Part shown: positions 17,366 through 49,477 of the stretch, one piece after another
Numbering within the stretch: position 1 is the stretch's first letter
How the letters are laid out: each line of letters begins with the position of its first letter
Assembly: GCA_030704615.1 (NCBI GenBank)
Contig: CM060734.1
Location: forward strand, 1,922,001-1,986,000
Source: Takakia lepidozioides
Taxonomy: Eukaryota; Plantae; Bryophyta
Direction of reading: 5' to 3'
Length of the DNA: 64,000 bases
The notes under the pieces: model-generated
What the model was told of the DNA's origin: nothing
Databases searched by the model: none
Seen by the model: only the letters and a program-made list of their open reading frames with translations
Position numbers and translations under genes: made by a program

Positions 17366-18439
17366 TCACTAAGTCCCACTAAGCTACCACCACCCCTTGT
17401 GGAGTCACCCCCACCGCAACCCGGTGTGCGGGGCTCCACCTAGTGAGCGCCTCCGCCTCCTTGAGTGCCTTGGGCACTCAAGGGTGCTTCAGCCCCCCGT
17501 ACCTAGCGCTGCCACTGCCCCCACCACAGGGGCAGCGTCTCCTGCATCCCGACCCCCTGCCCTCAAGGCAAAGGGCCGCGACACATACCCCTACCAACAG
17601 GGAGTCGATGTCCTCATCGATTTGTCCATTTTGTAGAAGCGAACATCCAAGTTGTGGCGTCCCACATCAAGGAGTTTGTTTCCATACCATGGCGTCCCAT
17701 GGCAAAGAACCAAACCCCACACTTGACTCTACTCTCCACTAGCTAGTTCGGCCGACTTCCTCCAAGTCCCGGCCAAGGGTGGAGCCTCTCAAGCTCCTCC
17801 CAGTGCACTCTTCTTGGCCTACTCCAAGGCCAATGAATGATCCTCCACGAGGATCGAATCGCCTTACTGCAACAACATTGCTTGCGACCGCTCATGATGC
17901 CACTTTTGGCATCACCTTTTTTTTACTATGAACCAACCGTGCGCCCCAATCACTATAATTGGGTCCGCCTTGGAATGCTGGCCTGAGGTACGGGAACACG
18001 CCGAAGTTGCACTATGTCTTCGTCCCGAGGCTACACAATTATAGTACGTGAACGGAAGCACGTAGCTTCCACGTTAGCCCGCACTACAAGGCAACCCCCT
18101 CGGTAACGCAGTTATAGTACGCGCACGCGCCAGGTGCGCACTAGCACGTGAACTCCCCTAGGAAGGCGCAAGTTTCCTTGCCCCTTGGATGGGAGTCACC
18201 CGATTTCGGCACTACGCAAACACACGATTAATCCAATTTACCTCTTCCACTTTTGTAAGCTAGCATGCATTCTACACACTAGTCAACCATACCATGCATC
18301 AACATTCCAAATAAAATAGGACGCACAACATTTGGAAACCATTTCATTTATAACAAAATTTGTACAATATATCGTGCGCATACATATCGCTACACAACTA
18401 CATCGCTGTCCAAAACCACACAACACATGTGCACACCAC

Positions 18440-18540
18440 ACACTAGTATACCACTAGTCCACCACTAGTCCAGCCACTAGTCCAACCACTAGGCTACAAC
18501 TAGTCAGTCACTAGCTGCCCACTATGGCAGTCACTAGTCC
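18440..18540. repeat. CCACTAGT short tandem array in the B 3'-terminal module
   Basis: About 7 imperfect cactagt units; absent from B-prime. Confidence 0.7.
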
Positions 18541-18805
18541 ACACAATCGCCCCCCTAGCTGGTGCTTAGGTCCCTCTAAGTCCAGGTAGCCACAAGATGT
18601 GATAGTGACCATAGCCTCACTAAGTCCTCCACCACTATCCCTACTACACTCAAACTCGATAGATCAAGAGGCCGGGTGCAAGAGTTGCCCCATCGTTAGT
18701 CGCCGTCTTGCAACCTGTGAACTTGAGCTTGGGATCTCATGTATTGACTCCTATGAGCTTGGCCTCCCATGTCTTGTTAGCTGCCTCCAGTCATGTCCAC
18801 TGCCA

Positions 18806-21250
18806 CTATCCCAAGCAGTGTGGACACAACCAATCTCCGTCAGGAACCTTCTCAAGAGGTGGTGTCAAGCATCCCATATGCCAACCCCTTGAGCATCGAT
18901 CACACACCAGCATGGTGGCTGCCCCTTTGGCAGACCCACAGAGCATGCACCTCAAACCTGCAGGTACCACTGCCAAGTTTGGGTCAACTCTGCCATCGAC
19001 ATTGGGAAGGTGACATGGCGCACAATTACGCACATGGTCCTTCCAAGTCATGCCATCCCGACCCTCCAAGATCAGGACCCCTGAGGGCAACACCTCTCGA
19101 ACCCTCAGAATAACACGCCCTGCAGTAACATCCAGAGTCGTAGGAGCAGTCTGCTGCAAATAAACATAGTCACCAGGGCTAAACCTCCGAACCCCAGGAC
19201 GATATCCTCCACCACGTATAGTGGCATACCTCAACGTATCACGGTGCTGTGCAATGGCAAGGTTCTCAAAAGCCATGGGCATGACTTTCTTGAACAACTC
19301 TGCACGCTGATCACATGCACGTACCCACACGTCCGGATCGTCAAGGTTAAGGACTTGAGCAGTGTCCCTACGAATGGCTGCAGGCAAATCCGGCTCTCGG
19401 CCAAAGAGAAGGAAATATGGTGAGAAGGAGGCAAGTGATGCTTGTTTGCTGAACCTGTAGCCCATGGCTAACCAAGGAACCTGAAGATCCCAATCTCCTA
19501 GGTGTCCCTTCTGCAAGCCATACTTGCGCAAACCCCTCTTCACCGTCTGAACAACTCTCTCTGCTAAGCCATCGGCCTCAGGATGATCCCGAGAAGTGGT
19601 GCGGTGGTCTATCAAGGCTTTATCACACAAAGCCTGAAACTCCCCCAAGAACTCTCTCCCTTGGTCCGTGAGTACCTCAGCTGGAGCACCAAATCGGCTA
19701 AGCACACGATCCAAGAATGCATACGCAGCCCCCTCACTAGCCTTGTCAGGCAATGGAACCAACTCAATCCACTTGGAGAAGTGCTCCACCATCACCAACA
19801 CATATCTGTGGTGGCGCATAGTCAGTGGCAACGGTCCTGCGAAGTCAAGACTCCACCTGTAGCCCAATCCCATGATTGGTAAAGGATGCAACTGTGGTGT
19901 AGGGGCGTTGAATGAAGCACGCACCCTGTCACACACCATGCACCTAGCCACGAACTGTTGCACCTCTGTATGCATACCACGCCACCAATACTGCCCCTGC
20001 AGTAAACTGTGAGTGCGTCGCACTCCAAAATGCCCCAACTCCTCATGGGCATGCCGCACTAACCGTGCACGCTGTGTGGGGTGAGGCACAATCCTCACCC
20101 GACCATCCTCCCACACTCGAAGTAGGTGTATCCCCTCCCACTTGAACCTCTTGGCTCGTTGCAGGATCCGATCCCTCTCCCTGGCAGTCACAGTGGCTGC
20201 CGTGTCTCCCGTGCGGAGGTAGTCCAACACAGCCGAATCCTCATGTATATCTCTGGCACCACCTGGCTCATCACTAGCCTCAGGGTCCTCAGACACTCCG
20301 TCTACAGTCATCCCTGTTGTAGGTCCAACCTGACCTCCCGATGCCAAGATACACAAAAATGCAGATGCGTGCCATCCCGGCACCATCTCCTCGTCCGTCT
20401 CACCATGCCACCGAGCTCCAGTGTCATCCTGCTGGCTCATGCATGGATTGCGACTCAATCCATCCGCATCCCGATTGACCAAACCCGGTCGATGCACAAC
20501 CTGAAAGTCATACTCCTGGAGTATGAGTGCCCACCGTGCAAGCTTCCCCGTAAGCTTGTCTGACTCCATCAACCACTTGAGTGGCTGGTGATCCGTGACA
20601 AGGGTGAAAAGATTGCCGTATAGATAGCACCTGAAGTGTGCCACGGCCCACACTGCAGCTAAGCACTCTCCCTCATATGAGCTGTACTTAGCCTCTGCAG
20701 CGTTGTTCGAGCGGCTAGCATAAGCCACTACGAACTCTCTTCCCTCATCATCCACCTGTGTGAGCACCGCTCCAAGCCCCAGCATGCTCCAATCCGTATG
20801 CAGCTGAAAGGGACGCCCCCTGATAGGTCGTCTCAGGATAGGCGCCGAGGTCAACCTCGCCTTGAGCTCTTGAAAAGCTCGTTCCTGCTCATCTTCCCAC
20901 TGCCACTCCTGGTCCACCTTGGTCAGCTTGGTTAGAGCCTTTGCAATGGTACTAAATCCCTTGACAAACCGTCTATAATAGTTTGCCAACCCCATGAAAG
21001 CTCGAACTCGGCTCACATCCGTGGGGCGTGGAATTTGTGCAATGGCCTCTACCTTAGTCTGCTGTACCCCCAATCCTCCAGGATATATCATGTGACCCAG
21101 ATACTCAATCTGGTTGTGGAAAAACTTGCACTTCCCCGGATGCAACTTCAATCCGTGCGCTCTCAAGCGCTCCAATACCACCTGAACGCATCCACACATG
21201 CTGAGGTGTCTCATGCTCCTCCATCGTAACACTAAAGATGATGATGTCAT
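18806..21250 (-). CDS. pol: B pol C-terminal part: RT thumb, RNase H, HHCC+DDE integrase, PHD finger (18806-18949)
   Basis: LHTDWSMLGLGAVL, YEGECLA, VTDHQPL; HAHEELGHFG..CMVC; SLDFAGP, TDQGREF, DGLAER; C4HC3 CMLC..MLVCDRCSRGWHMGCLTPPLEKVPDGDWLCPHC. Confidence 0.93.
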   Translation of the reverse strand: MTSSSLVLRWRSMRHLSMCGCVQVVLERLRAHGLKLHPGKCKFFHNQIEYLGHMIYPGGLGVQQTKVEAIAQIPRPTDVSRVRAFMGLANYYRRFVKGFSTIAKALTKLTKVDQEWQWEDEQERAFQELKARLTSAPILRRPIRGRPFQLHTDWSMLGLGAVLTQVDDEGREFVVAYASRSNNAAEAKYSSYEGECLAAVWAVAHFRCYLYGNLFTLVTDHQPLKWLMESDKLTGKLARWALILQEYDFQVVHRPGLVNRDADGLSRNPCMSQQDDTGARWHGETDEEMVPGWHASAFLCILASGGQVGPTTGMTVDGVSEDPEASDEPGGARDIHEDSAVLDYLRTGDTAATVTARERDRILQRAKRFKWEGIHLLRVWEDGRVRIVPHPTQRARLVRHAHEELGHFGVRRTHSLLQGQYWWRGMHTEVQQFVARCMVCDRVRASFNAPTPQLHPLPIMGLGYRWSLDFAGPLPLTMRHHRYVLVMVEHFSKWIELVPLPDKASEGAAYAFLDRVLSRFGAPAEVLTDQGREFLGEFQALCDKALIDHRTTSRDHPEADGLAERVVQTVKRGLRKYGLQKGHLGDWDLQVPWLAMGYRFSKQASLASFSPYFLLFGREPDLPAAIRRDTAQVLNLDDPDVWVRACDQRAELFKKVMPMAFENLAIAQHRDTLRYATIRGGGYRPGVRRFSPGDYVYLQQTAPTTLDVTAGRVILRVREVLPSGVLILEGRDGMTWKDHVRNCAPCHLPNVDGRVDPNLAVVPAGLRCMLCGSAKGAATMLVCDRCSRGWHMGCLTPPLEKVPDGDWLCPHCLG

Positions 21251-21956
21251 CTATGTAGCACCGAGCAAAGTCCACCCCTGCTAGAATCCTATCCATGACT
21301 CTCTGAAACTCTGCAGGAGCATTCTTAAGCCCAAATGGTAAGAACCGCCACTGATATAGGCAATCCTTGCCGTGCTCATTGATCCCCCAGAATGCCGTCT
21401 TCTGCTTGTCCGCCTCCTTGATTGGCAACTGGTGATATCCGGATCGTAAATCCAAAGTGCTAAAGGCCTTAGCATGCCCGATGGCATCAAAGATCTCCTC
21501 TGGTGTTGGCATGGCATACTTATCGGACTTGGTCTGACGATTTACAGGCCGGTAATCACCGCACATACGTCTCTCCGTCCAATTGCCATAGACATCCTTC
21601 TTGGCTGGCATCACTGTGGCTGAAGCATACTCTCCACCAGAGAGCTCCACCAAACCTGCCTCCCAGAGATCTTGAGTCCTCATCTGAATCAAAGACCTCT
21701 CCATGTCACTGTATCTATAGGGTCTCCGAAAGATTGGCGTGTCAGTGGCCAACTCAATACGGATCTCTTGACCCTTCAGTGCTCCCAAGTCCTTCAAACT
21801 GAAGGCAAAGCAATTCCTGTAAGCCCTCAGGAACCGCCGTATACGTCGTCTCTCTCCTCCGGTGACAATGGGTCCAATGTCAGGCTCCCAATTGTCCTCC
21901 GTAACTGCAACCTTAAGTCCAGTGGGCTTAGAGGTAGAGGACGCGTCCAGTGGTTG
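21195..21956 (-). CDS. B reverse transcriptase, in frame with the upstream ORF across TAG 21957-21959; frameshift after YIDD
   Basis: [45 protein letters not shown]. No stop between 21956 and 21797 (QPLDASS...FLRAYRNCFAFSLKDLG). Confidence 0.92.
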
Positions 21957-24713
21957 CTATGTTGCAACCTCTTGAGCAGTACTCCCTGCCTGCTCAGTCA
22001 ATGACAAGGCCTCATCCTGCCCCATCATCTCATCCTTGAGGACCTCCTCAACCCGAGAAGAATCCCCAACCTCATCCATCACAGCCGCCTTGGCTGCCAA
22101 CTCCCTCTGAACCTCGAGCACCTCCCACGTGTGCCATGGATGCATGCACCCCGTGGTCCTCACATGCTCGCCCCCACTCACTGCCTGTACCGTCTCGGTA
22201 GGCAGAGAGACCATTGAGGGAAGTGTACTCCGCACTCTGCGTTGCTCAGCCAGAGCCAAGCTGATAATCCAGGTCAAGCAATTGAGATCCATTGCTTGCC
22301 CCAACACTTGACGACGTGATGCCTCAGAAAGAGACGACACCGCCGTGGTACCAGTGGTAAAACCCATTGCCCGCTCACGCTCGTCAGCATTAGGCTCCAC
22401 TAACTGCTGCAACTGAGCATCCCACAGGAGGCCAGGTCCACTATCCCGGAAAGCATGCGATCCTGGGAAGCTGAGCAGTGTAGGTAATGCTGCTCGTGGT
22501 TGACCCACCTTGTTGACCACTGCCAAAGGCGAACGGTCATCGTGTCTCACACGCTGAGACTGCCTCCCTGTGTCCAGAATGTTATCCACTGTGAGATGTG
22601 CTGGCCGCTGCACCCCATCAAATGCACGCTTGAGCAGTGCGGGTGGCATCAAGTTAGTCCACCATAGCCGTGGACGATGAGCCCGTGACCCCACTGTAGC
22701 TGCATCTAGCAACACTGCTGACCCAAGCCACGACCGGACTTGATGCACACTGGCCATCACCCTGGCCCGAGAATCGCCCATCAGTGGCACATTCTCCAAG
22801 ATGTATGCTGGAGATACAGCTTGATGAAGCTGCAAGTGGCGCAAAACCCGCACCATCTCCCAAAACAGACCCGACCTCGAGTCTCGCAATCCATTGCCAT
22901 GCCCGGCTGATGAATGCCCTTGGCAGGGCCAACCTGCCACTACCAGATCAATGGAGCCAACCCGCTCCAAATCCTGCGCCCCCAGCAACGAAATGTCTGC
23001 TGGCAAGGCCTGCTGATATCCACGAATTGCAGACACCGACAACAACTCAGGGTACCGCTGCACCAACTGAGCAACATGGCGAAGTGAAACGCGTCGTGCA
23101 GTCTCATCCCTCTCCACATACAGGTAACGCCGAACTCGTACACCTGCTTGTAACACAGCAGCCAATCCGGTGCTGATCCCGCCAAACAAGTCCAGAAGAC
23201 AAATGCCTTCATCCGGATACTGCCACACAATAGGTGTGGTGTCCAATGGAGACAATTGAGGTGGTCCTGGTGCAATCCCCACACTCTCCTCCTCTCCTGA
23301 CGGTACAAAAGCCTCCACCCAGGCTTGTTGCACCCGTCGATCAGCATCCCGCTGCAAATCCTTGCTCGTGCCCCACAATGGAGTCTGAGCAACCATGGTA
23401 GGCAACTCCGCCATACCATACATGTCATCCTGCTCTCCCGGAGGTGGTACATCCTCTGAATGAGCATTGCCCTCAAGCAACTCTCTAGGCCAACTCACTG
23501 CCGCTGTGAATGCTGCTAGTGTCGGCATCTTGCCTCGCTGGGCAACCGCAACTCCTCCTATGAACGTCACAGGGAGCTGCACACGCCGGCCCTCCCCTGA
23601 CTGCCATGCAGGCCTATAGGAAGCTGACTCCTCCCAAAAATCCAGGGTGAAGCCCATGGGGTACAACACTGCCCCACCAACCAGGACATCGTATGAGACT
23701 GCGTCTGTCACAATGGCCTTGGCTCGCATCACTGAGCCATCTGTAGGGTGATCCGGCCGTAGTCTGATAGCCAACTCACGCCGTGTCATGCCCCGAGCCT
23801 GCTCCGATCCTCCCAGAGACGTCTGTATCTGGAAAGGACAAGGCTCCATATCCGCCTCCGTGAGGCCCAAGCCTGCAATAGCAGCTCTGCCCAGCATCAA
23901 TGGCTGAGCTCCCGAGTCCAACAAGACCCGCAGTGGCCGGTACCTCTTGCCTGCCGGTCCACTCAAACAGAAAATGTCATCCTGGTTGTCTAACATGACA
24001 ACTCCAGGTGTCACCATGGCGCGCTCAATGGCTGGCCTAGCTGGCAGCTCCATCAACCTGGCAGCTGCAGCTTGCCATGGCGCCGCCGTGGCAGTCTTGA
24101 CCCTCAAATCCGAGGATCCCTCCGGCACTACACCTCCCACTATCTCCGCAGAAGATGAAGTAACCTCCCCACTCTCACAGAGTGTAGCTGCCAGCCTGAA
24201 CACCTCAGCTGGTCTTACCCCCGGCGTCGCAATCATGGTAGCCGAGAACAATGGAGCCTGGCACACAGATGTGGCCGCTCCTAGCAGCACACTAGCTGCC
24301 GTAGCCTTGGCAACACTAGGTAGTGGTGCTACCCGTGTAGCTCTCCCCAATGGCATAGTAACCTCCGCCTCGGTAACAGTCGGGCGAGAACTAGGTGCCA
24401 TGGATGGCGTCGACACTGTCTCCGCCAATGTGAATGACTGAGGAAGCCTAGCCTGACGGCTTGCCTCCCCACGCTGTGGATCCAACTCCACCTCTGCACC
24501 TCGTGGCTCAGGAACTCGTGCTGCTCCTCGAGTCACGGCTGCAGCAGACTCCACCTGCACTAGTGGTAGTGCTGCTCCACACATGAATCCCATGCCTCCC
24601 ATATCTCCTCCCTCAGGAGCAGGAGGTGGACCATCCGGCCTTAGAGCCGGTACCACCTGAGCTGTAGCCATGGCAGCGAGCCTCTGCTCTAGCTGCTGAA
24701 GCCGGTTGGCCAT
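21957..24713 (-). CDS. B aspartic protease plus C5 cytosine DNA methyltransferase (DNMT3-like domain ~22260-23210)
   Basis: Protease LLDSGAQ. DNMT motifs: I LDLFGGIS, II VERD, III ADI, IV AGWPCQGHS, VI LENV, VIII AHRPRLWWTNL, IX ERERAMGF, X RRQVLGQAM. Confidence 0.93.
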   Translation of the reverse strand: MANRLQQLEQRLAAMATAQVVPALRPDGPPPAPEGGDMGGMGFMCGAALPLVQVESAAAVTRGAARVPEPRGAEVELDPQRGEASRQARLPQSFTLAETVSTPSMAPSSRPTVTEAEVTMPLGRATRVAPLPSVAKATAASVLLGAATSVCQAPLFSATMIATPGVRPAEVFRLAATLCESGEVTSSSAEIVGGVVPEGSSDLRVKTATAAPWQAAAARLMELPARPAIERAMVTPGVVMLDNQDDIFCLSGPAGKRYRPLRVLLDSGAQPLMLGRAAIAGLGLTEADMEPCPFQIQTSLGGSEQARGMTRRELAIRLRPDHPTDGSVMRAKAIVTDAVSYDVLVGGAVLYPMGFTLDFWEESASYRPAWQSGEGRRVQLPVTFIGGVAVAQRGKMPTLAAFTAAVSWPRELLEGNAHSEDVPPPGEQDDMYGMAELPTMVAQTPLWGTSKDLQRDADRRVQQAWVEAFVPSGEEESVGIAPGPPQLSPLDTTPIVWQYPDEGICLLDLFGGISTGLAAVLQAGVRVRRYLYVERDETARRVSLRHVAQLVQRYPELLSVSAIRGYQQALPADISLLGAQDLERVGSIDLVVAGWPCQGHSSAGHGNGLRDSRSGLFWEMVRVLRHLQLHQAVSPAYILENVPLMGDSRARVMASVHQVRSWLGSAVLLDAATVGSRAHRPRLWWTNLMPPALLKRAFDGVQRPAHLTVDNILDTGRQSQRVRHDDRSPLAVVNKVGQPRAALPTLLSFPGSHAFRDSGPGLLWDAQLQQLVEPNADERERAMGFTTGTTAVSSLSEASRRQVLGQAMDLNCLTWIISLALAEQRRVRSTLPSMVSLPTETVQAVSGGEHVRTTGCMHPWHTWEVLEVQRELAAKAAVMDEVGDSSRVEEVLKDEMMGQDEALSLTEQAGSTAQEVAT

Positions 24714-26127
24714 GCCTTGGTCAACACCCTGACCTCCGCGTCCTTGGCCACGTTGAGCTTGCCCTTGGCCTCGTGGCTGGCCACCTCGTCCTCTCTGGGC
24801 TGCTCCACCTCGCCCCGGCCACCATTGTTCCCTTGGAACTGGCCTGGGCGCAACTCAGGATGCAAACCATAACACTGGGCCTCTCCATGCCCGTGCTTGC
24901 CACAATGCCCACACTGCAACTGTGCAGGCTGTGCATGTGCCGACCCTTTGCCTCCCTCTGGGCAATCCTTCTTGACATGGGGTCCTCCACATGTCCAGCA
25001 CACCACATCCGCCCGTTGTTGGCCAGCAAATGAAGGGAGAGACCCCTGCATCTGAGGTCCTCTCTGCCCTTCCCTGAGCTTCACCTGAGCCCCCTTGTTG
25101 CCTTGAGCACGTTGAGGTAGTGGTTGGCTAGGAGCACCACTACCCCGTGGTGTCTCCTTAGCAAATCCCACCATGACCACTCGTTCCTCCACCATGTTGA
25201 GCTCTATCCGCTCTGCCAGCAAAAACACATTTGCTAAGGTGGGTTGGGCCGCTTGTAGGAGAGTTGCATCCCGCACCCTTCTCCTCAGCTCCTTGTCCAA
25301 TATCCCATACCAGAATTGGACTGCCTGAGCTTCCGTAACCCCTTGGGTTACATTTATCAAGCGCCTCATGCGAGTGAAAGCCTCCCTCAAGCTCTCGGTC
25401 GGCTTCCGTTGGAACTCTTGCAAGCTCCGCAACTTCTCTGTCCTCACCCCTTGGTAGTTCCCTCTCAACTCTTCGAAGAACTCCACAACAGGGTTGAAGG
25501 CAGGCACGGGTGCTAGTGCTGGTGCGGTAGTGGCTTGGGTGGACGTCGTAGCTACTGTACCACCAGTCCCACTAGTTCCACTGCTACTTGCTGAAGCTGC
25601 CGGTGCAGCGGCAGGTGTAGCCACTGCCCTCGTGGCTCTAGTGCCCCTAGTGATGGAGACATAGTCGGGTGACAAGTACATCCTCCACTCCTCGATCTCA
25701 ACCTCATGCCCCCACCTGAACTCATGGTAATCATCCATAGGCGGCCCCTCAAGGTGCTGAAACAGCCCTTTCCATGCCATGAACGGCGTAAATAGTTGTG
25801 GATTGCGCATTTGCTGCAAATCACACCAACTATCAAACTCTTGGATAAAATCATCCAACTCGATGGTGCCCACCCCCAGAGTACCTTCGTGGCCCTTGGT
25901 AGCTCCATACATCTCCTCCATTGTGTCCCACAACAATGACAAGAAACAACTTGCACCGCCGGTATGAGTCCTCCTGATTCACAATCCGAATCAGAACCTT
26001 CCGTGGAAGACACAGGAGGTGAAGGTGGCCTAAACCGCACACCTCGTCTCGTGTACCCACTAGTATCGCTAGTGCTCGAACCGGCACTGTCCCCAGCAAC
26101 TAGTGGCACCTCCGTGTTAACACTCAA
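24689..26127 (-). CDS. gag: B gag (two Zn knuckles, RGG-rich tail; 1-nt frameshifts near 24820 and 25940)
   Basis: LQEFQRKPTESLREAFTRMRRL, CWTCGGPHVKKDC, CGHCGKHGHGEAQC. A shifted frame RGGAAQRGRGGQPRGQG... runs into MANRLQQLE. Confidence 0.8.
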
Positions 26128-26504
26128 CCAGTCATGAACATGTCCCTAACCCCCTCTTCACAAGGTAACCGGGTAGAGAACCTGTTGCGGCTTATGGTTT
26201 GGAATACTAAGTTCCTAACATAGCCTACACCTGTACCTGCATCCACCGCAAGCACTCCTATGGTTGGCTGGTCATCACCTCCAACCTCACCACAGGAGAA
26301 ACAATGATGGTCTGGCTGGTCATCACCCCAGCCTCACCATCGACAGCATGCTCTAGGACTGGCCGGTGATCAAATCCGGACAATCACCTATAAAAACAAG
26401 CGCCCACACAAAACTAGCATGGCGCACAGTCAAGCATGCAGGTATGGAGGGGATCCAAACACAAGAAATCAGAACGACAACTCCCCCACACCAAAGGCCC
26501 CAAA

Positions 26505-26965
26505 GGCCCCACAGCCCCAAAGGCCTCAGGCACGGCCTGTCACAGCCTCTCACAGCCCATCACAGCCCCAAAGGCCATGGGCACAGCCTGTCACAGCCCG
26601 TCACAGCCCCACAGGCCACTGGGCACAGCCTGTCACAGCCCCGCCACAGCCCATCACAGCCCCACAGGCCACTGGGCACAGCCTGTCAAAGCCCCTCACA
26701 GCCAGTCACAGCCCCACAGGCCTCAGGCACGGCCTGACACACAGCACAAGCCCTCACAGCCCGTCACAGCCCCAAAGGCCTCAGGCACGGCCTGTCACAG
26801 CCCCTCACAGCCCGTCACAGCCCCACAGGCCTCAGGCACGGCTTGTCACAGCCCTCACAGCCCCTCACAGCCTCAAAGGCCTCAGGCACGGCCTGTCACA
26901 GCCCGCACAGCCCGTCACAGCCCCACAGGCCACCGGGCACAGCCTGTCACAGCACAGCCCATAGC
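26505..26965. repeat. TCACAGCCC-based minisatellite in the B leader
   Basis: Dozens of cacagcc/tcacagccc units with a higher-order aggcc..ggcac.gcctg structure. Confidence 0.9.
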
Positions 26966-27459
26966 CCATCCATGGCCGCTCTGGCCGTTTAGCCATTTCT
27001 CCAAGGGGTTTAGCCACGCCAAGCTAGGGTTTGTGTCTCTTGGACTCTAGGCTTCTTTCCACCGAGCTATGGCGGCTGTGAGGAAATCAGCAAGGTATTC
27101 TTGCTCTTTCGACTCCCACACACCACCATAGTAGCCCTAAGCCATGAGGTGGTTGCCACAAACCAAGCCTTCTTTCTCACTTAGCCTCCCCAAACACGCC
27201 ACTAAACTCAATGGCAAACAACCAAGCCCTGCTGGTTCCCAGCCCTTGTGAGCACTCATTCAAGCACTCTCCTTGGCCATAACATCTATCTTAGAGCCTA
27301 TTCCAGCCCCCTACACCTGCTGCTTCAAGAGTTGCGCTCCCTTCAAGCTTGAAGTTGAAACCCCAACTCACATAGGCCCTACAAGTGCTTTTCTTTCACT
27401 CCAAGTGGAAACCAGCCCTAGACCTTCCGTTCTAGCTCTCTAAAGCTTGAAAACAAGAG

Positions 27460-27800
27460 CCTCAATGGGCTGAAGGCATGCTCCACACATGCCCCACTCT
27501 CACCATAAGAGAATCAGCTCCTTTGCTTCATTTCTTGCACCCACAAACCTGAAAATACAAGCTTCAGCAGGCTGAAAGCATGCTCCACATGCCCTACAGG
27601 GAAACCAGCCCTTCCTTCCTTTCTTGCACTCCCACACCTGAAAGTGCAAGCCTTCACCAGGCTGATAGCATGCTCCACACATGCATTGCCCTCACATAAA
27701 GGGAAGTCAGCCCTTCCCTCTTCCTTGCTTGCCCTCCAAGCTTGAAGATGGAAGCTTCAATGAGCTGAATACATGCTCCACACATGCAACCTCTTCACAC
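27460..27800. repeat. Four ~95-100-bp degenerate repeats in the B leader
   Basis: gctga..gcatgctccacacatgc at about 27470, 27572, 27662 and 27763. Confidence 0.7.
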
Positions 27801-28981
27801 AAGAGATATCAGCCCCCTATCTTGGCTCCTTGGCTCCTTGATGCTCTCTAAGACAAGACTAAGCACTCCATAGCCTTTGCCAAGCTCCTGAAACCCTAAG
27901 GCTTACATTTCCAGCCACAAGACACTTCTCTTGTGGTGCAAGAGCTCTTCTTCCAAGCTCTGAAACCCTAGGTGCACATTCCATGGCCTTGCCGCACCTC
28001 TTAGCTCTGTTCCAGCCCTGCTCTTGCCATGACAAGAGCCCTCTCAATGCTGAAGCTCGAGATTGAAACCCAATCTCACCATACTCCACAAAGTGCACTG
28101 ATTTGCCCCAAGCCAAATCAGCCCTTTCGCTTGGTCTTGCAATTCTTCACACAATGAAAGCTCGCATTCCCAAGTCCAGTTCTCAGCTTTGCCACCAAAG
28201 CCACTATAACCTGCTCTTGACTGGTCCTCTTCCCAATCGTGCTTGCTCATGCATGTACACAATCTGAAACCATCAAGGTGCTCTGGAATTACCTGCAGCA
28301 TGGTGCTTTCATCTCTGAAGCTGAAGATCGAATGCCAAGGTCTACCACCTCGTAACCCACATCGCCTCCGCTTCTAACAACCAAGAGCTCCACGGTGCTC
28401 CTTGCATAACAACTTGGTTTCTCTCATTCTCAAGCAAAAACCACAAGTGCTACAACTAACTCGTATCTGGCACTCACAGATACGAGCTGATCTTTCTCGA
28501 GTGATAAAGAAGAAGAATACAAGCACGAGCTCACAAATCTGAAGCATAAACTCATGCATATATAACCTCATCACTCAAATACAAGTCAAGCCAAGTGCAC
28601 CCCACGCCATGGGGAATCCACACTACGGCGCCATAGCTAGGCGCGGTGAGGCTCAACTCGAGAAAGATGAGCCTTCCGCGCTTGCCGTGAAGATAACCAC
28701 TCCAGGGCCTAAATCTGCCTTGACCCCTGGATTGACACTTGGGCCAATCCCAAATGTCAATATGTAAAAGCTAGCTATTTCCTAGCTAGTTTCACACTAG
28801 TGGTAAAATAACTTGACAAATACAAGTTTTTGCAATCGGATTCCTGAGCTAGCTAAGCCGGGCTAAGCATGCATTTCCTCCCCCACGATCCAAGGTTGAT
28901 GTCCCCATCAACACTTCTTCTGCTTTTGAGGTCGTCCTTCGAAAGCTGCAACCGCCTCGGATGTGTTCCCCATTTTTGAGG

Positions 28982-36449: not shown

Positions 36450-36878
36450 CTAAAGTTGTTTTGCTTCAATTCCTTCTGCTGGTTCGATGAGAGCCTCTGC
36501 TATCTTCTGGTCCAGGGTGGTTTTATCAATCACCTCCTTTTTCCTTGGTTTGGGTTTTTCCTCGTCATCAGAGTCTTCCTCTTCCAGGGTGTCCTTGGAA
36601 TCCTTGTTTCTGCTCTGGTGGAACCCGAGTTCCAATTTCTTTGCAGTTGCTACTACTTCAGCCAAAGTGTTGTTGGGTAAAACTGTAACCATAGTTACGT
36701 ACTCAGGACAAAGTTCATTGACGAACCATGACTTCTGTAAGTCATCCCCTAGTGCTTGGTTTAACTTCCTGACCAAAGTTTTCATTCTCTCCAGGTAGTC
36801 AACTACCAATTCTTTCTTATTATGTCTCAGATTCTGTAATCCTGTAAAGATTTCAGATGTGGATTTGTTGGAATGATA
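36450..36878 (-). pseudogene. gag: 3' half of the family-D Gypsy gag (split by B-prime)
   Basis: Joins 51372+ to give ATWDDMKATFQERY|HSNKSTSEIFTGLQNLRH...WFVNEL. Confidence 0.85.
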
Positions 36879-37219
36879 TGTCGGGCGCATACGTATCGCT
36901 ACACAAATACATCGTTGTCCAAACAAACACCAACACATATATGCACAATAAAGTAGTCTGCCACAATTGCCCCCTAGCTGGTGGATAGGTCCATCTAACT
37001 CCAGATAGCTACAAGATGTAATAGCCACAGCCGTACAAGTCCTCTATCACTGTCCCTATCTGCTCAAACTCATCAACCAAGAGGCCGGGGGTATAAGAGT
37101 AGCCCATCGTTAGTCGCCGTCTTGCAATCTGTGAACTTGAGCCAAGATCTCGTGTGTTCAAGGTCTACTAGTAGTAGCTTGGCCTTGCATTTCTTGTTAG
37201 TCTTCCATGGTTGTACCAC

Positions 37220-40200
37220 TCCCATATCCAATGCAATGTGGACATAACCAATCCCATCCGGAACCATCTCAAGAGGTGGAGTCAAGCATCCCATATGCCA
37301 ACATTCTAGAGCATCGATCACACATCAGCATGGTGGCTGCCCTTTTAGCAGACCCACACAACATGCACCTCAAACCTGCAGATACCACTGCCAGGTTTGG
37401 GTCAATCCTGCCATCGACATTAGGAAGGTGACATGACGCACAAGACGCACATGGTCCTTCCAAGTTATGCCATCCAGACCCTCCAAGAACCAAGACGCCT
37501 GAGGGCAAGACCTCTCGAACCCTCAAAAATAACACGTCCTGCGTCACATCCAGGGTCGTAGGAGCAGTCTGCTGCAGATAGACATAGTCACAGGGTTGAA
37601 TCTCCGAACCCCAGGACGATAGCCCCCACCACGTATAGGAGAATACCTCAACGTATCACGGTGTTGTGCAATGGCAAGGTTCTCGAAAGCCATGGGCATG
37701 ACTCTCTTGCACGCTGCTCACAGCACGTGCCCACACGTCCGGATCGTCAAGGTTAAGAACTGTAGCAGCTTCTCTGCGAATGGAATTGTAGGCAAATCCG
37801 GCTCTGCCAAAAGAGAAGAAAGTATGGTGAGAAAGGAGGCAAGTGATGTTTGCTTGCTGAACCTGTCCCATGGCTAACCAGGGTAACTGAAGGTCCCAAT
37901 CTCCTAGGTGTCCCTTCTGCAAGCCATACTTGCGCAAACCCCTCTTTACTGTCTGAACAACTCTCTCTGCCAAGCCATCGGCTTCAGGATGATCCCGAGA
38001 AGTGGTTGCGGTGGTCTATCAAGGCTTGTCACACAAAGCCTGAAACTCCCCCAAGACCTCTCTCCCTTGGTCCGTGAGTACCTCAGCTGGAGCACCGAAT
38101 CGGCTAAGCACACAATCCAGGAATGCATAGCAGCTCCCTCACTAGCCTTATCAGGCAATGGAACCAATTCAATCCACTTGGAGAAGTGCTCCACCATCAC
38201 CAACACGTACTTGTTGTGGCGCATGGTCAGTGGCAACGGCCCTGCGAAGTCAAGACTCCACCTGTAGCCCAATCCCATGATCGGAAGAGGGTGCAATTGT
38301 GGAGTAGGGGCGTTGAATGAAGCACGCACCCTATCACCACACCATGCACCTAGCCACAAATGTTGCACCTCTGTGTGCATACAACGCCCACCAATACTGC
38401 CCCTGCAGTAGACTATGAGTGCGTCGCACCCCAAAATGCCCCAACTCCTCATGGGCATGCCGCACTAACCGTGCCCGCTGGTGTGGTGAGGCACAATTCT
38501 CACTCGACCATCCTCCCACACTCGGAGCAGGTGTGTCCCCTCCCACTTGAACCCTCTTGGCTCGTTGTAGGATCCGATCCCTCTCCTTGGCAGTCACAGT
38601 GGCTGCAGTGTCTCTAGTGCGGAGGTAGTCCAACACAAGTGAAATCTCATGTATATCTTTGGCGCCACCTTGCTCATTGCTGGCCTCAGGGTCCTCAGAC
38701 ACTTGATCTACAGTCATCCCTGTTGTTGCAGGTCCAACCTGGCCTTCCGCTGCCAAGATACACAGAATGCAGATGCATGCCATCCGGGCACAATCTTCTC
38801 TTCCGTCTCACCATGCCACGAGCTCCAGTGTCATCCTGCTGGCTCGTGCATGGATTGCGACTCAACCCATCTGCATTGTGATTGACCAAACCCGTCGATG
38901 CACCACCTGAAAGTCATACTCTTGAAGGATGAGTGCCCACCGTGCAAGCTTCCCCGTCAGCTTGTCTAACTCCATCAACCACTGAGTGGTGGGTGATCCG
39001 TGACAAGGGTGAAGAGATTGCCGTATAGATAGCACCTGAAGTGTGCACGGCCCACACTGCAGCTAAGCATTCTCCCTCATATGAGCTATACTTAGACTCT
39101 ACAGCATTGTTCGAGCGGCTAGCATAAGCCACTACGAACTCTCTCCCTCATCATCCACCATGGTGAGCACCGCTTCAAGCCCCAGCATGCTCCAATCTGT
39201 ATGCAGCTGAAAAGGAGCCCCCTGATAGGTCGTCTCAAGATGGGCGCCGAGGTCAACCTCACCTTGAGCTCTTGAAAAGCTTGTTCTTGTCATCTTCCCA
39301 CGCCGCTCCTGGCCACAAATGGTCAGCTTGGTTAGAGCCTTTGCAATGGCACTAATCCCTTAACAAAACGTCTTGTAATAGGTTGCTAACCCATGAAAGC
39401 TCGACACTGGCTCACATCCGTGGGGCGTGGAACCTGTGCAATGGACTCTACCTTAATCTGGTCCCCCCAATCCTCCAGGATATATCATGTGACCCAGATA
39501 CTCAATCTGGTTGTGGAAAAACTTGCACTTTCCCGGATTATAACTTCAATCTGTGCGCCCTCAAGCGCTCAAATACCCCCGAATGGTCTCTCATGCTCCT
39601 CCACAGTTAGTAGCACTAAGATGATGATGCATCTATGTAGCACCGAGCAAACTCCACCCTGCTAGAATCCTGTCCAGACTCTTTGAAAACAGCTCAGGAG
39701 GGAGCGTTTTTAAGCCCAAATGGTTAAAAACCGCCAATGGTATAGGCAATCCTTCCCGTGCTCATTGATCCACCAGAAATGCCGTCTTTTGCTTATCCGC
39801 CTCCTTGATCAGCAACTGGTGATATACGGATCGTAAATCCAACGTGCTTAAAGACCTTGGAATGCCCAATGGCATCAAAGATCTCATCTGGTGTCGGCAT
39901 GGCATACCTATCGGACTTGGTCTGACGATTTACAGGCCGGTAATCACCGCACATACGTCTCTCCGTCCAATTGCCCATAGACATCCTTCTTGGCTGGCAT
40001 AACTGTGGCTGAGCATACTCTCCACCAGAGAGCTCTACCAAACCTGCCTCCCAAAGATCTTGAGTCTCATCTGAATCAAAGACCTCTCCATGTCACTGTA
40101 TCTATAGGGTCTCCGAAAGAAGTTGCGTGTCAGTGGCCAACTCAATAAGGATCTCTTGACCCTTCATGTGCTCCCAAGTCCTTAAAATTGAAGGCAAAGC

Positions 40201-42365
40201 AATTCCTGTAAGCCCTCAGGGAACCGCCGTATACTCGTCTCTCTCCTCCGGTGACAATGGGTCCAATTTGTCGGCTCCCAATTGTCCTCCGTAACTGCAA
40301 CTTAAGTCTGTGGGCTTAGAGGGTAGAGCGCGTCCCGTGGTTGCTATGCTGCAACCTCTTGAGCAGTACATCCCTCCTGCTCAGTCAATGACAAGGCCTC
40401 ATCCTGCCCATCATCTCATCATTGAGACCTCCTCATCCCGAGAAGAATCCCCAAACCTCATCCATCACAGTTGCCTTGGCTGTGCCAACCTCCCTATGAA
40501 CCTCGAGCACCTCCCACGTGTGCCATGGATGTCTACACTCCGTGGTCCTCACCGGCTCGCCCCACTCGATGCCTGTACAGTCTTGGTAGGCAAGGAGACC
40601 GTCAAGGGAAGGCACTCCGCACTCTACGTTGCTCAGCCATAGCAAGCTGATAATCCAGGTCAAGCAATTGAGATCCATTGCTTGCCCCAACACTGACGAC
40701 GTGATGCTCAGAAAGAGAAGGCACCGCCGTGGTCCCAGTGAAAAATCCCATAGCCCGCTCTCGCTCGTCGGCATTAGGCTCCACTAACTGTTGCAAACTG
40801 AGCATCCCACAGGAGGCCAGGTCCACCATCCCGAAAAAGCATGGATCCTGGGAGCTTAGCAGTGTAGGTAATTTGGCTGCTCGTGGTTGACCCACCCTGT
40901 TGACCACTGCCAAAGGCGAACGGTCATCGTGTCTCACACGTTGAGACTGCCTCCCTGTGTCCAAAATGCTGTCCACTATGAGGTGTGTTGGCTGCTGCAC
41001 CCATCAAATGAAGCTTGAGCAATGCGGGTGGCATCAAGTTAGTCCCACCATAGCCGTGGACGATGGAGCCCGTGATCCCCCACTACAGCTGCATCCAAGC
41101 AGCACTGCTAACCCAAGCCACGACCAGACTTGATTCCACATGGCCATCACCCTGGCACGAGATCGCCCATCAGTGGCAAATTCTCCAAGATGTATGCTGG
41201 CGATTACAGCTTGATGAAGCTGCAAGTGGCGCAAAATCCGCACCATCTCCCAAAACAGACCCGTCCTCGAGTCTCGCAATCCATTGCCATGCCGGCTCAT
41301 GATGCCTTTGGCAGGGCCAACCTGCCACTACCAGATCAATGGAGCCAACCTGCTCCAAATCCGGCGCCCCCAGCAACGAAATGTGCTGGCAAGGTTGTTG
41401 GTACTCCACGAACTGCAGACACTGGCAACAAGTAGGATACTGCGTGTAACCAACTGAGAAATAGGCGCAGTGAGATGCGTCGTGCAGTCTCATCCCCTCC
41501 ACATACAGATAACGCCTTACCCGCACACCTGCCTGTTCGCCAGCAGCCAATACCGGTGCTGATCCGCCAAACAAGTCCAGAAGGCAAATGCATTTATCCG
41601 GTACTGCACAAATAGGTGTGGTATCCAATGGTGACAAATGAGGGGTCCTGGTGCAATACCTGCACTCTCCTCCTGACGGTACAAAAGCCTATACCCAGGC
41701 TTGTTGCACCCGTCGATCAGCAACTGCTGAAATCCTTGCTCGTACCCCACAATAGAGCGTGAGCAAACCATGGCAGGCAACTCCACCATACCATGCATGT
41801 CATCCTGCTCTTGCTGGAGGTGGGCATCTCTGCATGGGCATTGCCTTCCAGCAACTCTCCAGGCCAACTAACTGCAACTGTAAAGGCGGGCTAGTGTTGG
41901 TATCTGCCCTGTTGGGCAGCCACAATACCCCCAATGAATGTCACAGGGAGCTGTGCACGACGACCAGCCCCTGACTGTCATCCAGGCCTGTAGATGCTGA
42001 CTCCTCCCAAAAGTACCAGGGTGAAGACCCATGGGTATAACACCTGCACCACCACGAGGACATCGTAAGAGAACCGCATCTGTCACAATGGCCTTGGCTC
42101 GCATCACTAAGCCATCTGTAGGGTGATCCGGTTGCAGTCTAATGGCCAACTGATGCCGTGTCATGCCCCGAGCCTGCTCTGATCTCCCAGAGATGTCTGT
42201 ATCTGAAAAGGACAAGGCTCCATATCGCCTCCATGAGGCAAACTTGTAATAGCAGCTTGCCCAACATCAGTGGTCTGAGCTCCGAGTCCAACAAGACCCG
42301 CAGTGGCCGGTACTTCTTTGCCTGCCGGTCCAGCTCAAAGATAAAATGTCATGGTTGTTAACAAG
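37220..42365 (-). pseudogene. B-prime PHD-integrase-RNaseH-RT-DNMT-protease, indel-riddled
   Basis: Fragments ICLLDLFGG, DLVVAGWPCQ, GLFWEMVR, LGQAMDLNC, RMCGDYRPVN, WSLDFAGP, CMLCGSAK..CDRC. Confidence 0.88.
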
Positions 42366-42865
42366 NNNNNNNNNNNNNNNNNNNNNNNNNNNNNNNNNNN
42401 NNNNNNNNNNNNNNNNNNNNNNNNNNNNNNNNNNNNNNNNNNNNNNNNNNNNNNNNNNNNNNNNNNNNNNNNNNNNNNNNNNNNNNNNNNNNNNNNNNNN
42501 NNNNNNNNNNNNNNNNNNNNNNNNNNNNNNNNNNNNNNNNNNNNNNNNNNNNNNNNNNNNNNNNNNNNNNNNNNNNNNNNNNNNNNNNNNNNNNNNNNNN
42601 NNNNNNNNNNNNNNNNNNNNNNNNNNNNNNNNNNNNNNNNNNNNNNNNNNNNNNNNNNNNNNNNNNNNNNNNNNNNNNNNNNNNNNNNNNNNNNNNNNNN
42701 NNNNNNNNNNNNNNNNNNNNNNNNNNNNNNNNNNNNNNNNNNNNNNNNNNNNNNNNNNNNNNNNNNNNNNNNNNNNNNNNNNNNNNNNNNNNNNNNNNNN
42801 NNNNNNNNNNNNNNNNNNNNNNNNNNNNNNNNNNNNNNNNNNNNNNNNNNNNNNNNNNNNNNNNN
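42366..42865. other. Assembly gap (500 N)
   Basis: Run of N. It must hide several kb (B-prime gag plus the A-prime 5' LTR and gag). Confidence 0.99.
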
Positions 42866-47476: not shown

Positions 47477-47935
47477 CTAAGGGTCATATCCCAATGGCTC
47501 AGGGCACCTGCACCTGCATCCACCGCAAGAACGCCTATGGTTGGCTGGTCATCAACCCAGCCTCACCATAGAAGAAACACTGGTGGTCTTGCTGGTCATC
47601 ACTCCAGCCTCACCACCTACAGCATACTCTAGGATTGACCGGTGATCAAATCCGGCCTAATCCCTATGAAAGCAAGCGCCCACACAAAACCAACATGGCG
47701 CACAGTCAAGCATGCAGGTGTTGGGGGGGATCCAAACACAAGAAATCAAAACATGAACACCCCCACACCAAAATCCAGCTGCAATGCTGATCCTGCAGAA
47801 TAGCCCAGCCCAAAACCCCGGACTGACTGGCCTCTACCAAGAGAGGCTTTGGCAACTATAAGTACAAGGTTATGAAAGTAGTACAGAGATGGAGGGGAAG
47901 AATAGAAGCCCGACCAAGCAAGATCTAATCCTGAT

Positions 47936-48685: not shown

Positions 48686-49477
48686 ACAAGGAGTACATCC
48701 CCAGATTTATCTCTCATGTAGACCAGAACAGGTTCTAGAAACAGGATTGTGGGTCTTTCATGGCACACTCACACTCTAAAAATTCCATAGATTTCTAGCA
48801 GAGTCCCAAAAACAAAAACCAGGTTTAGATAGGTAGATATCCCCTTTCTGCAGCTATCCCCTCAAAAACTGAGTCAAACGGAGCTCATTTGACAAAGATA
48901 TGACCAACCAGGCTCTTTAAACATAACACCAAAACTCTTTTTCTTTTTTCTTTTTTCTTTTTTTCTTTTTTAACACCAAAACGTTCTCGCCATTACAACC
49001 TGTTCCTAGGTTATCTACGGGTTCCCGAGGCCGTTCCCCCCGACAGGACTTCGCCAGTGAGATTCATAGTCCCTTGGGAGGCATTGAACAGTCTTTAACC
49101 AGCCAAGGGATAGATCCGGCACGGACTGTCAACTCAGCCTCTTCAGTGCAGGTGATTAGAGGATCTGTTGTGGAGGTGACAAAGGAGACTCAAGGAGCAG
49201 ATGGAGTAAATGGAAACACTGCCAAAATACTGGCTGCTGTAGTGACTTCCAATAGGCGACCAGCTGTGTCAGACTCCGAAGATGATGATTCAATCTCATG
49301 GTCAAGTTCAGGCAGCGAGGAGCATAACCGGAAAGAAAGAGGAAGTATCACAGATGAAGGAAAAGAACAGGTGAGTGTATCACGAGCATCTGCAGATGGC
49401 GTGGTTATGGACTCTCACCATCAGTTTGACCATTCTGGAAGTTCTGGGAGTTCTCTAAGGGATGCAGAGCTCCACTC

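What the first reader, a model, noticed from the sequence alone, without database searches (positions are those of the whole stretch)
18370..28818. Gypsy-like element with RT and integrase but no LTRs: TGTC...GACA ends and 4-bp TSDs in two independent insertions
Seen: B is bounded by AATA/AATA and B-prime by GATA/GATA. Excising them restores the hosts (the A 3' UTR, and the gag frame TWDDMKATFQERY|HSNK). Left ends match each other and right ends match each other (...ctagctagtttcacact...taacttgaca), but left and right ends share only about 4 bp of inverted repeat. I found no tRNA PBS. Known: LTR replication regenerates identical LTRs, whereas TGT...ACA ends with 4-bp TSDs typify Ginger DNA transposons, which use Gypsy-like integrases but lack RT. 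Inference: this may be an intermediate class that copies itself without canonical strand transfer, or one that is mobilised by cut-and-paste.
Basis: partly seen in the sequence, partly recalled or inferred. Interest (0 to 1): 0.9.

Follow-up and report, generated by a model that had tools for sequence, protein, structure and literature searches.

The report
Gypsy-Dnmt3 retrotransposon copies lacking terminal repeats
The two "LTR-less" elements are real insertions of a plant/algal Gypsy retrotransposon lineage that carries a DNA methyltransferase, and whose relatives have split direct repeats instead of LTRs; the priming signals suggest its integrase cuts a palindrome inside the LTR, not at the DNA tips.

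Summary
B (18370-28818) and B' (36879-51371), both coding on the minus strand, have 4-bp target duplications (AATA, GATA). Their ends are T(A/G)TC...GACA. An empty paralogous site exists, and no terminal direct, split or inverted repeat rises above chance.

They are not a new LTR-less class. They encode gag, protease, a Dnmt3-like methyltransferase, RT, RNase H and an integrase with a PHD finger. This is the lineage published as KnitGypsy-Dnmt3. Relatives in liverworts, mosses and Klebsormidium have the form A1-internal-B1-NN-A2-B2, with the same ends and 4-bp duplications. B and B' are the A-internal-B form, which recurs with duplications at five or more moss loci.

Two priming signals are new here:
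- A Tf1-like self-priming site lies directly after A.
- A polypurine tract lies directly before B.

These imply a reverse-transcription product with LTR = B-NN-A. The integrated ends are then the two halves of an internal palindrome, GACA-NN-TGTC.

I infer that B and B' are dead-end products lacking the 3' R region. They arose either at integration or by later B1xB2 recombination. Cut-and-paste transposition is unsupported.

The parts
18366..18369 (.). Left copy of the 4-bp target-site duplication of B (AATA)
   Evidence: empty site in A'
18370..28818 (-). Element B, 10,449 bp, of the form A-internal-B with no second A or B copy
18370..18546 (-). B-segment of element B. It is the 3' terminal block, ending ...CGCACGATA in sense, and is homologous to the B repeat of relatives. 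It contains a ~12-nt tandem at about 18440-18540 that B' lacks
   Evidence: its last ~55-75 nt match both B1 and B2 of the Marchantia and Riccia copies
18547..18556 (-). Polypurine tract AGGGGGGCGA, directly upstream of the B-segment
   Evidence: the same motif sits at the same place in L001, L013, L014, L050 and L075, and a G-run does so in K. nitens L086
18806..21250 (-). ORF for the end of RT, RNase H, integrase (H2C2 + rve) and a C-terminal PHD finger
   Evidence: Pfam; the closest solved structure is Ty3 (E 4e-59)
21105..21797 (-). RT ORF, separated from the next ORF by a frameshift
   Evidence: frame 2 changes to frame 3 at sense 7606/7632
21957..24713 (-). ORF with an aspartic protease motif (LLDSGAQ) and a Dnmt3-like cytosine-5 methyltransferase. 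Motifs FGGISTG, PCQ and ENV are present
   Evidence: Pfam PF00145; the best solved relatives are DNMT3A (E 1e-9)
24689..25942 (-). gag with zinc knuckles
25943..28489 (-). Long variable leader with tandem arrays at 26487-26986 and 27264-28125
28490..28501 (-). Self-priming primer-binding site CTCGAGAAAGAT, directly after the A-segment
   Evidence: RNA fold
28502..28818 (-). A-segment of element B (317 bp), beginning TGTCAAG in sense. I infer that it holds the promoter, R and U5
   Evidence: the A boundary is set by analogy with A2|B2 junctions in relatives
28657..28668 (-). Segment ATCTTTCTCGAG, complementary to the primer-binding site. It is the inferred first bases of the transcript, which would serve as the primer
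28819..28822 (.). Right copy of the target-site duplication of B (AATA)
36875..36878 (.). Left copy of the target-site duplication of B' (GATA)
36879..51371 (-). Element B', of the same A-internal-B form. It is degraded by many frameshifts, and part of gag is replaced by a nested A-family fragment
36879..36966 (-). B-segment of B'
36967..36975 (-). Polypurine tract of B' (AGGGGGCAA)
42364..47504 (+). Truncated A-family Gypsy copy (A') nested in B'. It replaces the stretch equivalent to B 23996-26227 and contains the empty site for B at 45946/45947
51004..51015 (-). Self-priming primer-binding site of B' (CTCGAGAGAGAT). It differs from that of B by a change that is compensated in its partner
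51016..51371 (-). A-segment of B'
51206..51217 (-). Partner of the B' primer-binding site (ATCTCTCTCGAG)
51372..51375 (.). Right copy of the target-site duplication of B' (GATA)

Best explanation
**What the elements are.** B and B' belong to a Ty3/Gypsy lineage of streptophytes. The lineage encodes gag, protease, a Dnmt3-type methyltransferase, RT, RNase H and an integrase with a PHD finger. Its full-form copies carry split direct repeats, A1-internal-B1-NN-A2-B2, rather than LTRs.

**What is shown directly.**
- Every form ends TGTC...GACA (TGCC...GGCA in Klebsormidium) and has a 4-bp duplication.
- B1 and A2 abut as a palindrome, GACA-NN-TGTC.
- A polypurine tract lies directly before B.
- The bases directly after A are complementary to the middle of A. 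Their sequence differs between species but the pairing is kept.
- The A2|B2 junction is exactly 'end of A' joined to 'start of B'.

**What I infer about replication.**
1. Transcription starts inside A, and the RNA primes itself as Tf1 does.
2. Ordinary two-jump reverse transcription then yields a linear DNA with LTR = B-NN-A at both ends.
3. The integrase does not use the tips of this DNA. It makes a staggered cut at the internal palindrome, which produces a processed ...GACA end and a processed TGTC... end.
4. If the two tips are first joined, as in a 2-LTR circle, and one palindrome is cut, the product is A-int-B-NN-A-B. This is the only form that can replicate again.
5. If both palindromes of the linear DNA are cut, or the single palindrome of a 1-LTR circle is cut, the product is A-int-B. 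This is the form seen in this window.

**What follows for B and B'.** They keep the promoter, primer-binding site and polypurine tract but lack the 3' R. They are therefore dead-end copies that cannot replicate on their own. I lean slightly (about 55:45) towards them being primary integration products rather than later B1xB2 deletions.

**How the confidence splits.** The family assignment and the anatomy stand at about 0.9. The internal-palindrome integration scheme stands at about 0.6.
For: - **Domains:**
- **Family and its repeat layout in the literature:** (PMC5890265, Fig. 4c legend).
- **Split repeats with 4-bp duplications:** L001 GTCA, L013 TCTC, L014 AAGG, L075 CATA and K. nitens L086 TCTT.
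- **Palindromic B1-NN-A2 junction:** about 30 loci.
- **Polypurine tract before B1, and precise A2|B2 junctions:**
- **Complementarity of the primer-binding site at offset 0 after A:** 11 nt in L001, 16 nt in L014 and L041, 15 nt in L086, 12-13 nt in B and 14-15 nt in B', with a compensatory change between B and B'. Random 30-mers reach 10 nt in 5 of 2000 trials.
- **RNA fold:** the 5' end pairs with the primer-binding site, z = -5.7.
- **Snap-back right ends:** L064/65 and L081 end as B1-NN-A2-PBS-rc(A 1..~163). This is the structure of a plus strong-stop DNA folded back on itself, and it ends at ...ATGACA next to flank. It shows that A is followed by the primer-binding site in the DNA product, and that the half-site is chosen wherever it lies.
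- **A-int-B form with duplications elsewhere:** L007 TGTT, L018 TACA, L058 TGTG, L079 ACTA, and L012 with 3 of 4 bases matching.
- **Counts:** about 15 single-form and 12 split-repeat distinct loci in one moss family.
- **Tree:** the two forms are interleaved.
Against: - No transcript, cDNA or enzyme data were available. The transcription start, R, the linear product and the cleavage are all inferred.
- Random cutting of a 2-LTR circle predicts equal numbers of the alternative form A-B-NN-A-int-B. None was seen among about 13 observed 5' ends. So either the choice of palindrome is directed or the A|B joint is made in another way.
- All six liverwort copies sampled have split repeats, so the single form is not universal.
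- Single-form copies have slightly longer terminal branches (0.062 vs 0.046; not significant, p = 0.13). This would fit later deletion.
- No other copy from the window's own genome could be examined.
Confidence: 0.65

Rival explanations
1. B and B' were inserted as full split-repeat elements (A-int-B-NN-A-B). Each later lost NN-A2-B by unequal recombination between the ~100-bp B1 and B2 repeats, in the same way that solo LTRs form. Replication and integration are otherwise as in the best explanation.
For: - B1 and B2 are direct repeats only ~340 bp apart, and the product keeps both target duplications, as observed.
- All six liverwort copies sampled have split repeats.
- Single-form moss copies trend older.
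Against: - Split-repeat copies persist with B1/B2 identity down to 84-91% without collapsing.
- Of the 12 moss loci seen in more than one sample, none occurs in both states.
- The age difference is not significant (p = 0.13).
- It needs two independent deletions in this one window.
- Repeats of ~100 bp are short for efficient recombination (general knowledge).
Confidence: 0.4
2. B and B' represent a self-sustaining retroelement type without LTRs. It would regenerate its ends without the usual strand transfers.
For: Two insertions 12% apart both lack repeats. The same form recurs in mosses.
Against: - The transcript inferred from the self-priming site starts at about sense position 151. It therefore lacks the first ~150 nt of A, and nothing in A-int-B can restore them.
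- Single-form copies do not form their own clade.
- B has frameshifts and B' is heavily degraded.
- The primer-binding site and polypurine tract are in the positions used for standard jumps.
Confidence: 0.04
3. Integrated copies are moved as DNA, by cut-and-paste using the element's integrase, in the manner of Ginger transposons.
For:
- If the integrase really cuts internal sites in duplex DNA, excision is conceivable.
Against: - There are no terminal inverted repeats beyond 4 bp.
- No excision footprints were seen. The empty site is a diverged paralogue.
- A full retrotransposon gene set and priming signals are present.
- The snap-back and A|B-junction forms are signatures of reverse transcription.
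Confidence: 0.04

Closest known systems
KnitGypsy-Dnmt3 of Klebsormidium nitens (de Mendoza et al. 2018, PMC5890265)
   Same: - Both have Gypsy domain order with a Dnmt3-type methyltransferase in the polyprotein.
- The K. nitens copy fetched here (L086) shares the PHD-integrase, A-int-B-NN-A-B repeats, a 4-bp duplication, a palindromic junction, a G-rich tract before B and a self-complementary primer-binding site after A.
   Different: - B and B' lack A2-B2.
- Integrase identity to K. nitens is only about 43%. The closest relatives are bryophyte copies, at 72-79%.
- The paper notes only that the repeats are arranged 'as in DIRS'. In the parts of it that I read, it does not describe the duplications, the junction palindrome, the priming signals or the single form.
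Tf1/sushi and plant Tcn1 chromoviruses (self-priming Gypsy elements; Neumann et al. 2019, PMC6317226)
   Same: The primer-binding site is complementary to a segment of the element's own 5' region rather than to a tRNA.
   Different: - Those elements have ordinary LTRs and a chromodomain.
- This lineage has permuted (split) repeats, a PHD finger and a methyltransferase.
- Phylogenetic placement relative to Tcn1 was not tested.
DIRS / Ngaro / PAT elements with split direct repeats, including TOC1 of Chlamydomonas
   Same: They share the A1-internal-B1-A2-B2 layout, in which an internal B-A junction carries the information for both ends (PMC8969392; TOC1 is classed as DIRS in PMC9940879).
   Different: DIRS elements use a tyrosine recombinase and make no target duplication. 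This lineage has a DDE integrase (Pfam rve) and always a 4-bp duplication.
Ginger1/Ginger2 DNA transposons
   Same: They have a Gypsy-like integrase, TGT..ACA ends and short duplications (recalled, not tested).
   Different: Ginger has terminal inverted repeats of tens to hundreds of bp and no RT, gag or protease. B has no such inverted repeats and has the full retrotransposon set.
Retroviral 2-LTR circle junctions, and abutted-end junctions of IS30/IS911-type insertion sequences
   Same: Two element ends lie head to head with a 2-nt spacer, forming a palindrome that a DDE enzyme can cut. This is recalled from the literature on integrase cleavage of circle junctions and on (IS30)2 intermediates.
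   Different: Here the abutted ends are a permanent, inherited part of the element, lying inside its U3, rather than a transient by-product.

Membership tests
Ty3/Gypsy LTR retrotransposons (Metaviridae) | gag, protease, RT, RNase H and integrase in that order | tested here: met
   (Ty3 is the best solved relative)
Ty3/Gypsy LTR retrotransposons (Metaviridae) | Identical long terminal direct repeats at both ends | tested here: not met
   nothing above chance in B or B'. Relatives have split repeats, not LTRs
Ty3/Gypsy LTR retrotransposons (Metaviridae) | TG..CA ends and a 4-6 bp target duplication | tested here: met
Ty3/Gypsy LTR retrotransposons (Metaviridae) | A primer-binding site next to U5 and a polypurine tract next to U3 | tested here: met
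   A self-priming site follows A and a polypurine tract precedes B. Their function is inferred
KnitGypsy-Dnmt3-type elements | A Dnmt3-type C5 methyltransferase inside the Gypsy polyprotein | tested here: met
KnitGypsy-Dnmt3-type elements | Repeats arranged A-coding-B-A-B | tested here: not met
   Absent from B and B'. Present in L001, L002, L003, L087, L088, L089, L086 and 12 moss loci
KnitGypsy-Dnmt3-type elements | Sequence relatedness to K. nitens copies | tested here: met
   K. nitens proteins P0063, P0064 and P0093 match at E 1e-153 to 1e-188
DIRS-order retrotransposons | A tyrosine recombinase instead of an integrase | tested here: not met
   Pfam finds rve and Integrase_H2C2 and no phage-integrase domain
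DIRS-order retrotransposons | No target-site duplication | tested here: not met
   4-bp duplications in every complete copy
Ginger DNA transposons | Terminal inverted repeats and no RT | tested here: not met
Tf1/sushi-type self-priming elements | A primer-binding site complementary to the first bases of the element's own transcript | tested here: inconclusive
   The complementarity is strong and co-varies. The transcription start itself was not observed
Tf1/sushi-type self-priming elements | Phylogenetic position within the Tf1/sushi/Tcn1 branch | not tested
   No reference RT/integrase set was at hand

The most novel reading that the evidence does not exclude
This lineage is a DDE-integrase retrotransposon whose attachment site is an inherited pair of abutted ends (GACA-GC-TGTC) inside its LTR. 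Integration would then proceed by cutting an internal palindrome in linear or circular cDNA. This is a working version of the abandoned 'circle-junction' model of retroviral integration. Under it, the repeat-less copies in this window are direct products. The same ability to cut ends embedded in duplex DNA would make this lineage a plausible stepping stone towards Ginger-type DNA transposons.
Probability: 0.45. Interest if true: 0.8.

Novelty: new variant of a known kind. Interest (0 to 1): 0.6.

Why it matters
A Gypsy lineage with DIRS-like repeats was reported once, in a single figure legend, with no mechanism. The anatomy found here turns that oddity into a testable replication scheme. That anatomy consists of the priming signals at the repeat boundaries, the palindromic abutted ends, three kinds of right end that all stop at the same half-site, and frequent repeat-less insertions.

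If the scheme is right, three things follow:
- An integrase can use internal sites in duplex DNA.
- LTR-finding software will miss or mis-annotate a family that is widespread in bryophytes and charophytes.
- It offers a route from retrotransposon integrases to DNA transposases.

The element also carries a Dnmt3 and a PHD finger, which bears on how transposons interact with host chromatin.

Tried and rejected
- **Terminal repeats in B and B'.** I searched for LTRs, split repeats and inverted repeats with BLAST at word sizes 11 and 7 and with Smith-Waterman. Nothing exceeded shuffled controls.
- **Abutted-end junction in the window.** I looked for GACA-NN-TGTC. The two hits are at chance level and lie outside the elements.
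- **tRNA primer.** ARAGORN found no tRNA genes in the window, so tRNA complementarity could not be tested.
- **Age test of single versus split-repeat copies.** I compared terminal branch lengths and distance to a column majority over a 1.5-kb 3' region of 25 moss loci. The majority was computed in memory only and was neither printed nor saved. The result was not significant, so the test was inconclusive.
- **A locus present in both forms across samples.** None was found.
- **The alternative permuted form A-B-NN-A-int-B.** None was found.
- **Literature on integrase-bearing elements with split repeats or internal attachment sites.** Searches returned only de Mendoza 2018.
- **Source organism.** It was not identified. 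No protein hit exceeded 80% identity. It is not human; the nearest relatives are bryophytes.
Full report
**Setting.** The window is eukaryotic and is a nest of retroelements. It is not human. The nearest proteins to the element come from liverworts (Calypogeia, Riccia, Marchantia; 77-79% identity) and from moss-associated metagenomes. Klebsormidium and Closterium come next. The source species was not identified.

**The observation.** Element B is 18370-28818 and element B' is 36879-51371. Both code on the minus strand.
- B is flanked by AATA/AATA. A second copy of its host element (A') is continuous across the same point at 45946/45947, which fixes the inserted block to the base.
- B' is flanked by GATA/GATA and ends TGTC...GACA. 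The two flanks read together give an unbroken gag-like frame.
- B and B' are 88% identical over 5.4 kb of coding sequence. Their left ends match each other, and so do their right ends.
- Neither element has any direct or inverted repeat between its ends and the rest of the element beyond what shuffled sequence gives.

**What the element encodes.** In sense order it encodes:
- gag with zinc knuckles;
- a protease motif;
- a cytosine-5 methyltransferase, whose best solved relatives are DNMT3A (E 1e-9);
- RT and RNase H;
- an integrase with H2C2 and rve domains, followed by a C-terminal PHD finger.

Ty3 is the closest solved polymerase-integrase. B has a frameshift in RT, and gag is separated from the next ORF. 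B' has many frameshifts, and part of its gag is replaced by a truncated A-family element.

This gene set matches KnitGypsy-Dnmt3. De Mendoza et al. 2018 described that element in Klebsormidium nitens as having Gypsy domains but repeats arranged 'as in a DIRS retrotransposon', A-coding-B-A-B.

**Relatives.** I fetched chromosomal copies from Calypogeia, Marchantia, Riccia and K. nitens, plus 80 loci from moss-associated metagenomes.
- The Calypogeia copy L001 is A1 (341 bp) - internal - B1 (99 bp) - GC - A2 - B2. A1/A2 are 99.4% identical and B1/B2 are 100% identical. Its ends are TGTC...GACA and its duplication is GTCA.
- The same layout with a 4-bp duplication holds in the moss loci L013, L014 and L075, and in K. 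nitens L086, where the ends are TGCC...GGCA.
- In about 30 loci, B1 ends ...CGCACGACA, two bases follow (most often GC), and A2 begins TGTCATGA.... The junction is thus the palindrome GACA-NN-TGTC.
- The last 55-75 nt of B in the window match both B1 and B2 of the Marchantia and Riccia copies.

So B and B' are A-internal-B: the same element without NN-A2-B2.

**Priming signals.** Two features sit exactly at the repeat boundaries.
- *Polypurine tract.* AGGGGGGCGA, or a G-run in K. nitens, lies directly upstream of B1 in every lineage. It is present in B (18547-18556) and in B' (36967-36975).
- *Self-complementary site after A1.* The bases directly after A1 are complementary to a segment in the middle of A. 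The match is 11 nt in Calypogeia, 16 nt in moss L014/L041, 15 nt in K. nitens, 12-13 nt in B (28490-28501 with 28657-28668) and 14-15 nt in B' (51004-51015 with 51206-51217).

The paired sequences differ between species, yet the pairing is kept, and B and B' differ by a compensated change. Random 30-mers reach 10 nt in 5 of 2000 trials. The RNA from the partner segment to the site folds with its 5' end on the site (z = -5.7). A TATA-like motif lies about 30 nt upstream of the partner segment in the moss copies (read from the sequences).

This is the arrangement of Tf1-type self-priming, which is known in Tf1/sushi and proposed for the plant Tcn1 clade.

**What this implies.** With the primer-binding site after A and the polypurine tract before B, ordinary reverse transcription would give a linear DNA whose LTR is B-NN-A. 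In that LTR, U3 is B plus the first ~150 nt of A, and R-U5 is the rest of A. Three observations fit this:
- In split-repeat copies, the A2|B2 joint is 'last base of A' next to 'first base of B'. It is exact in most loci, and one locus has an 18-nt filler. This is what joining the two tips of such a DNA would give.
- Two independent moss loci (L064/65 and L081) end as B1-NN-A2-PBS-rc(A 1..~163). That is a plus strong-stop DNA folded back through the self-complementary site. The copy stops exactly at ...ATGACA next to flank.
- All three kinds of right end (single B, A2-B2 and snap-back) stop at a GACA half-site.

I therefore infer that the integrase cuts the internal palindrome rather than processing the DNA tips. 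A staggered cut there would yield one processed ...GACA end and one processed TGTC... end.
- Tips joined and one palindrome cut gives A-int-B-NN-A-B.
- Both palindromes of a linear molecule cut, or the single palindrome of a one-LTR circle cut, gives A-int-B.

**Status of B and B'.** The A-int-B form is not peculiar to this window. Five further moss loci have it with matching duplications: L007 TGTT, L018 TACA, L058 TGTG, L079 ACTA, and L012 with 3 of 4 bases. About ten more end at a single B followed by unrelated flank. After merging loci seen in several samples, one moss family has about 15 single-form and 12 split-repeat loci.

In a tree of 25 of these loci the two forms are interleaved, so the single form is not a lineage of its own. 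A transcript starting inside A of an A-int-B copy would lack both the first ~150 nt of A and any 3' R. Such copies should therefore be unable to replicate by themselves.

Whether they arise at integration or by later B1xB2 recombination is not settled.
- *For direct formation:* old split-repeat copies, with B1/B2 identity down to 84-91%, have not collapsed. None of the 12 loci seen in more than one sample occurs in both states.
- *For later deletion:* there is a non-significant trend to longer terminal branches in single forms (0.062 vs 0.046, p = 0.13). All six liverwort copies sampled have split repeats.

**Open problem.** If two-LTR circles were cut at random, the form A-B-NN-A-int-B should be as common as the split-repeat form. 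None was seen among about 13 observed 5' ends. Either the palindrome next to the primer-binding site is preferred, or the A|B joint is made by another route, for example an end-to-end template switch. This is unexplained.

**Comparison and novelty.** The lineage itself is known from a single report. As far as my searches show, the following are not described:
- the 4-bp duplications;
- the palindromic abutted ends;
- the self-priming site and the polypurine tract at the repeat boundaries;
- the snap-back form;
- the frequent repeat-less form.

The element is not a DIRS member, because it has a DDE integrase and makes duplications. It is not a Ginger transposon, because it has RT, gag and protease and no terminal inverted repeats. 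I file it as a new variant of a known kind.

Noticed in passing
window 17367-28981 vs 45788-46968 and 12159-12893: In host element A, the block from 17367 to 28981 (which includes B) is inverted relative to the A' copy and to A's own 5' LTR. The first ~224 nt of A's 3' LTR lie inverted at 17367-17584. A therefore suffered an inversion with one breakpoint inside its 3' LTR.
   Followed up: partly
window ~50650-50850, minus strand (leader of B'): A captured piece of a host gene lies here. Its 63 residues match rice monodehydroascorbate reductase (5jcm residues 294-356, E 4e-21). B has unrelated tandem arrays at the corresponding place, so the leader between the primer-binding site and gag seems to accept foreign sequence.
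   Followed up: partly
window 26487-26986, 27264-28125 and 18440-18540: B carries tandem arrays that B' lacks: a ~51-nt unit and a weaker longer unit in the leader, and a ~12-nt ACTAGTGG-type unit inside the B-segment.
   Followed up: no
L064:3361-3880, L065:1412-1930, L081:1283-1800: The right ends have the form B1-NN-A2-PBS-reverse complement of A(1..~163), stopping at ...GGTCATGACA next to flank. This looks like a plus strong-stop DNA that folded back on the self-priming site and was then integrated at the A-start half-site.
   Followed up: partly
L052:6852-7107, L054:11556-11811: There is a deletion across the B1|A2 junction at the shared string GTATGAC, which removes the palindrome.
   Followed up: no
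L013:10830-10860: The A2|B2 joint carries an 18-nt filler that copies nearby A sequence. Other loci have an exact joint.
   Followed up: no
window 29427-30704 (minus) and 31826-32394: A LINE-like ORF (weak Exo_endo_phos_2 match) lies just beyond A's 3' LTR. It is followed by 36-nt and 16-nt tandem arrays.
   Followed up: no
window 33225-34358 and 10425-11054: A third A-family pol fragment is present, and an extra A-family LTR lies in inverted orientation upstream of A.
   Followed up: no
window 57700-59760: A block of ~370-nt repeats at 64-93% identity. Its nature was not examined, and Pfam gave no hit for the ORF at 57753-58331.
   Followed up: no
L089:15793-22101 (Marchantia): A2 is truncated and the matching B2 lies ~6 kb further on, which suggests another insertion inside the A2-B2 region of this copy.
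   Followed up: no
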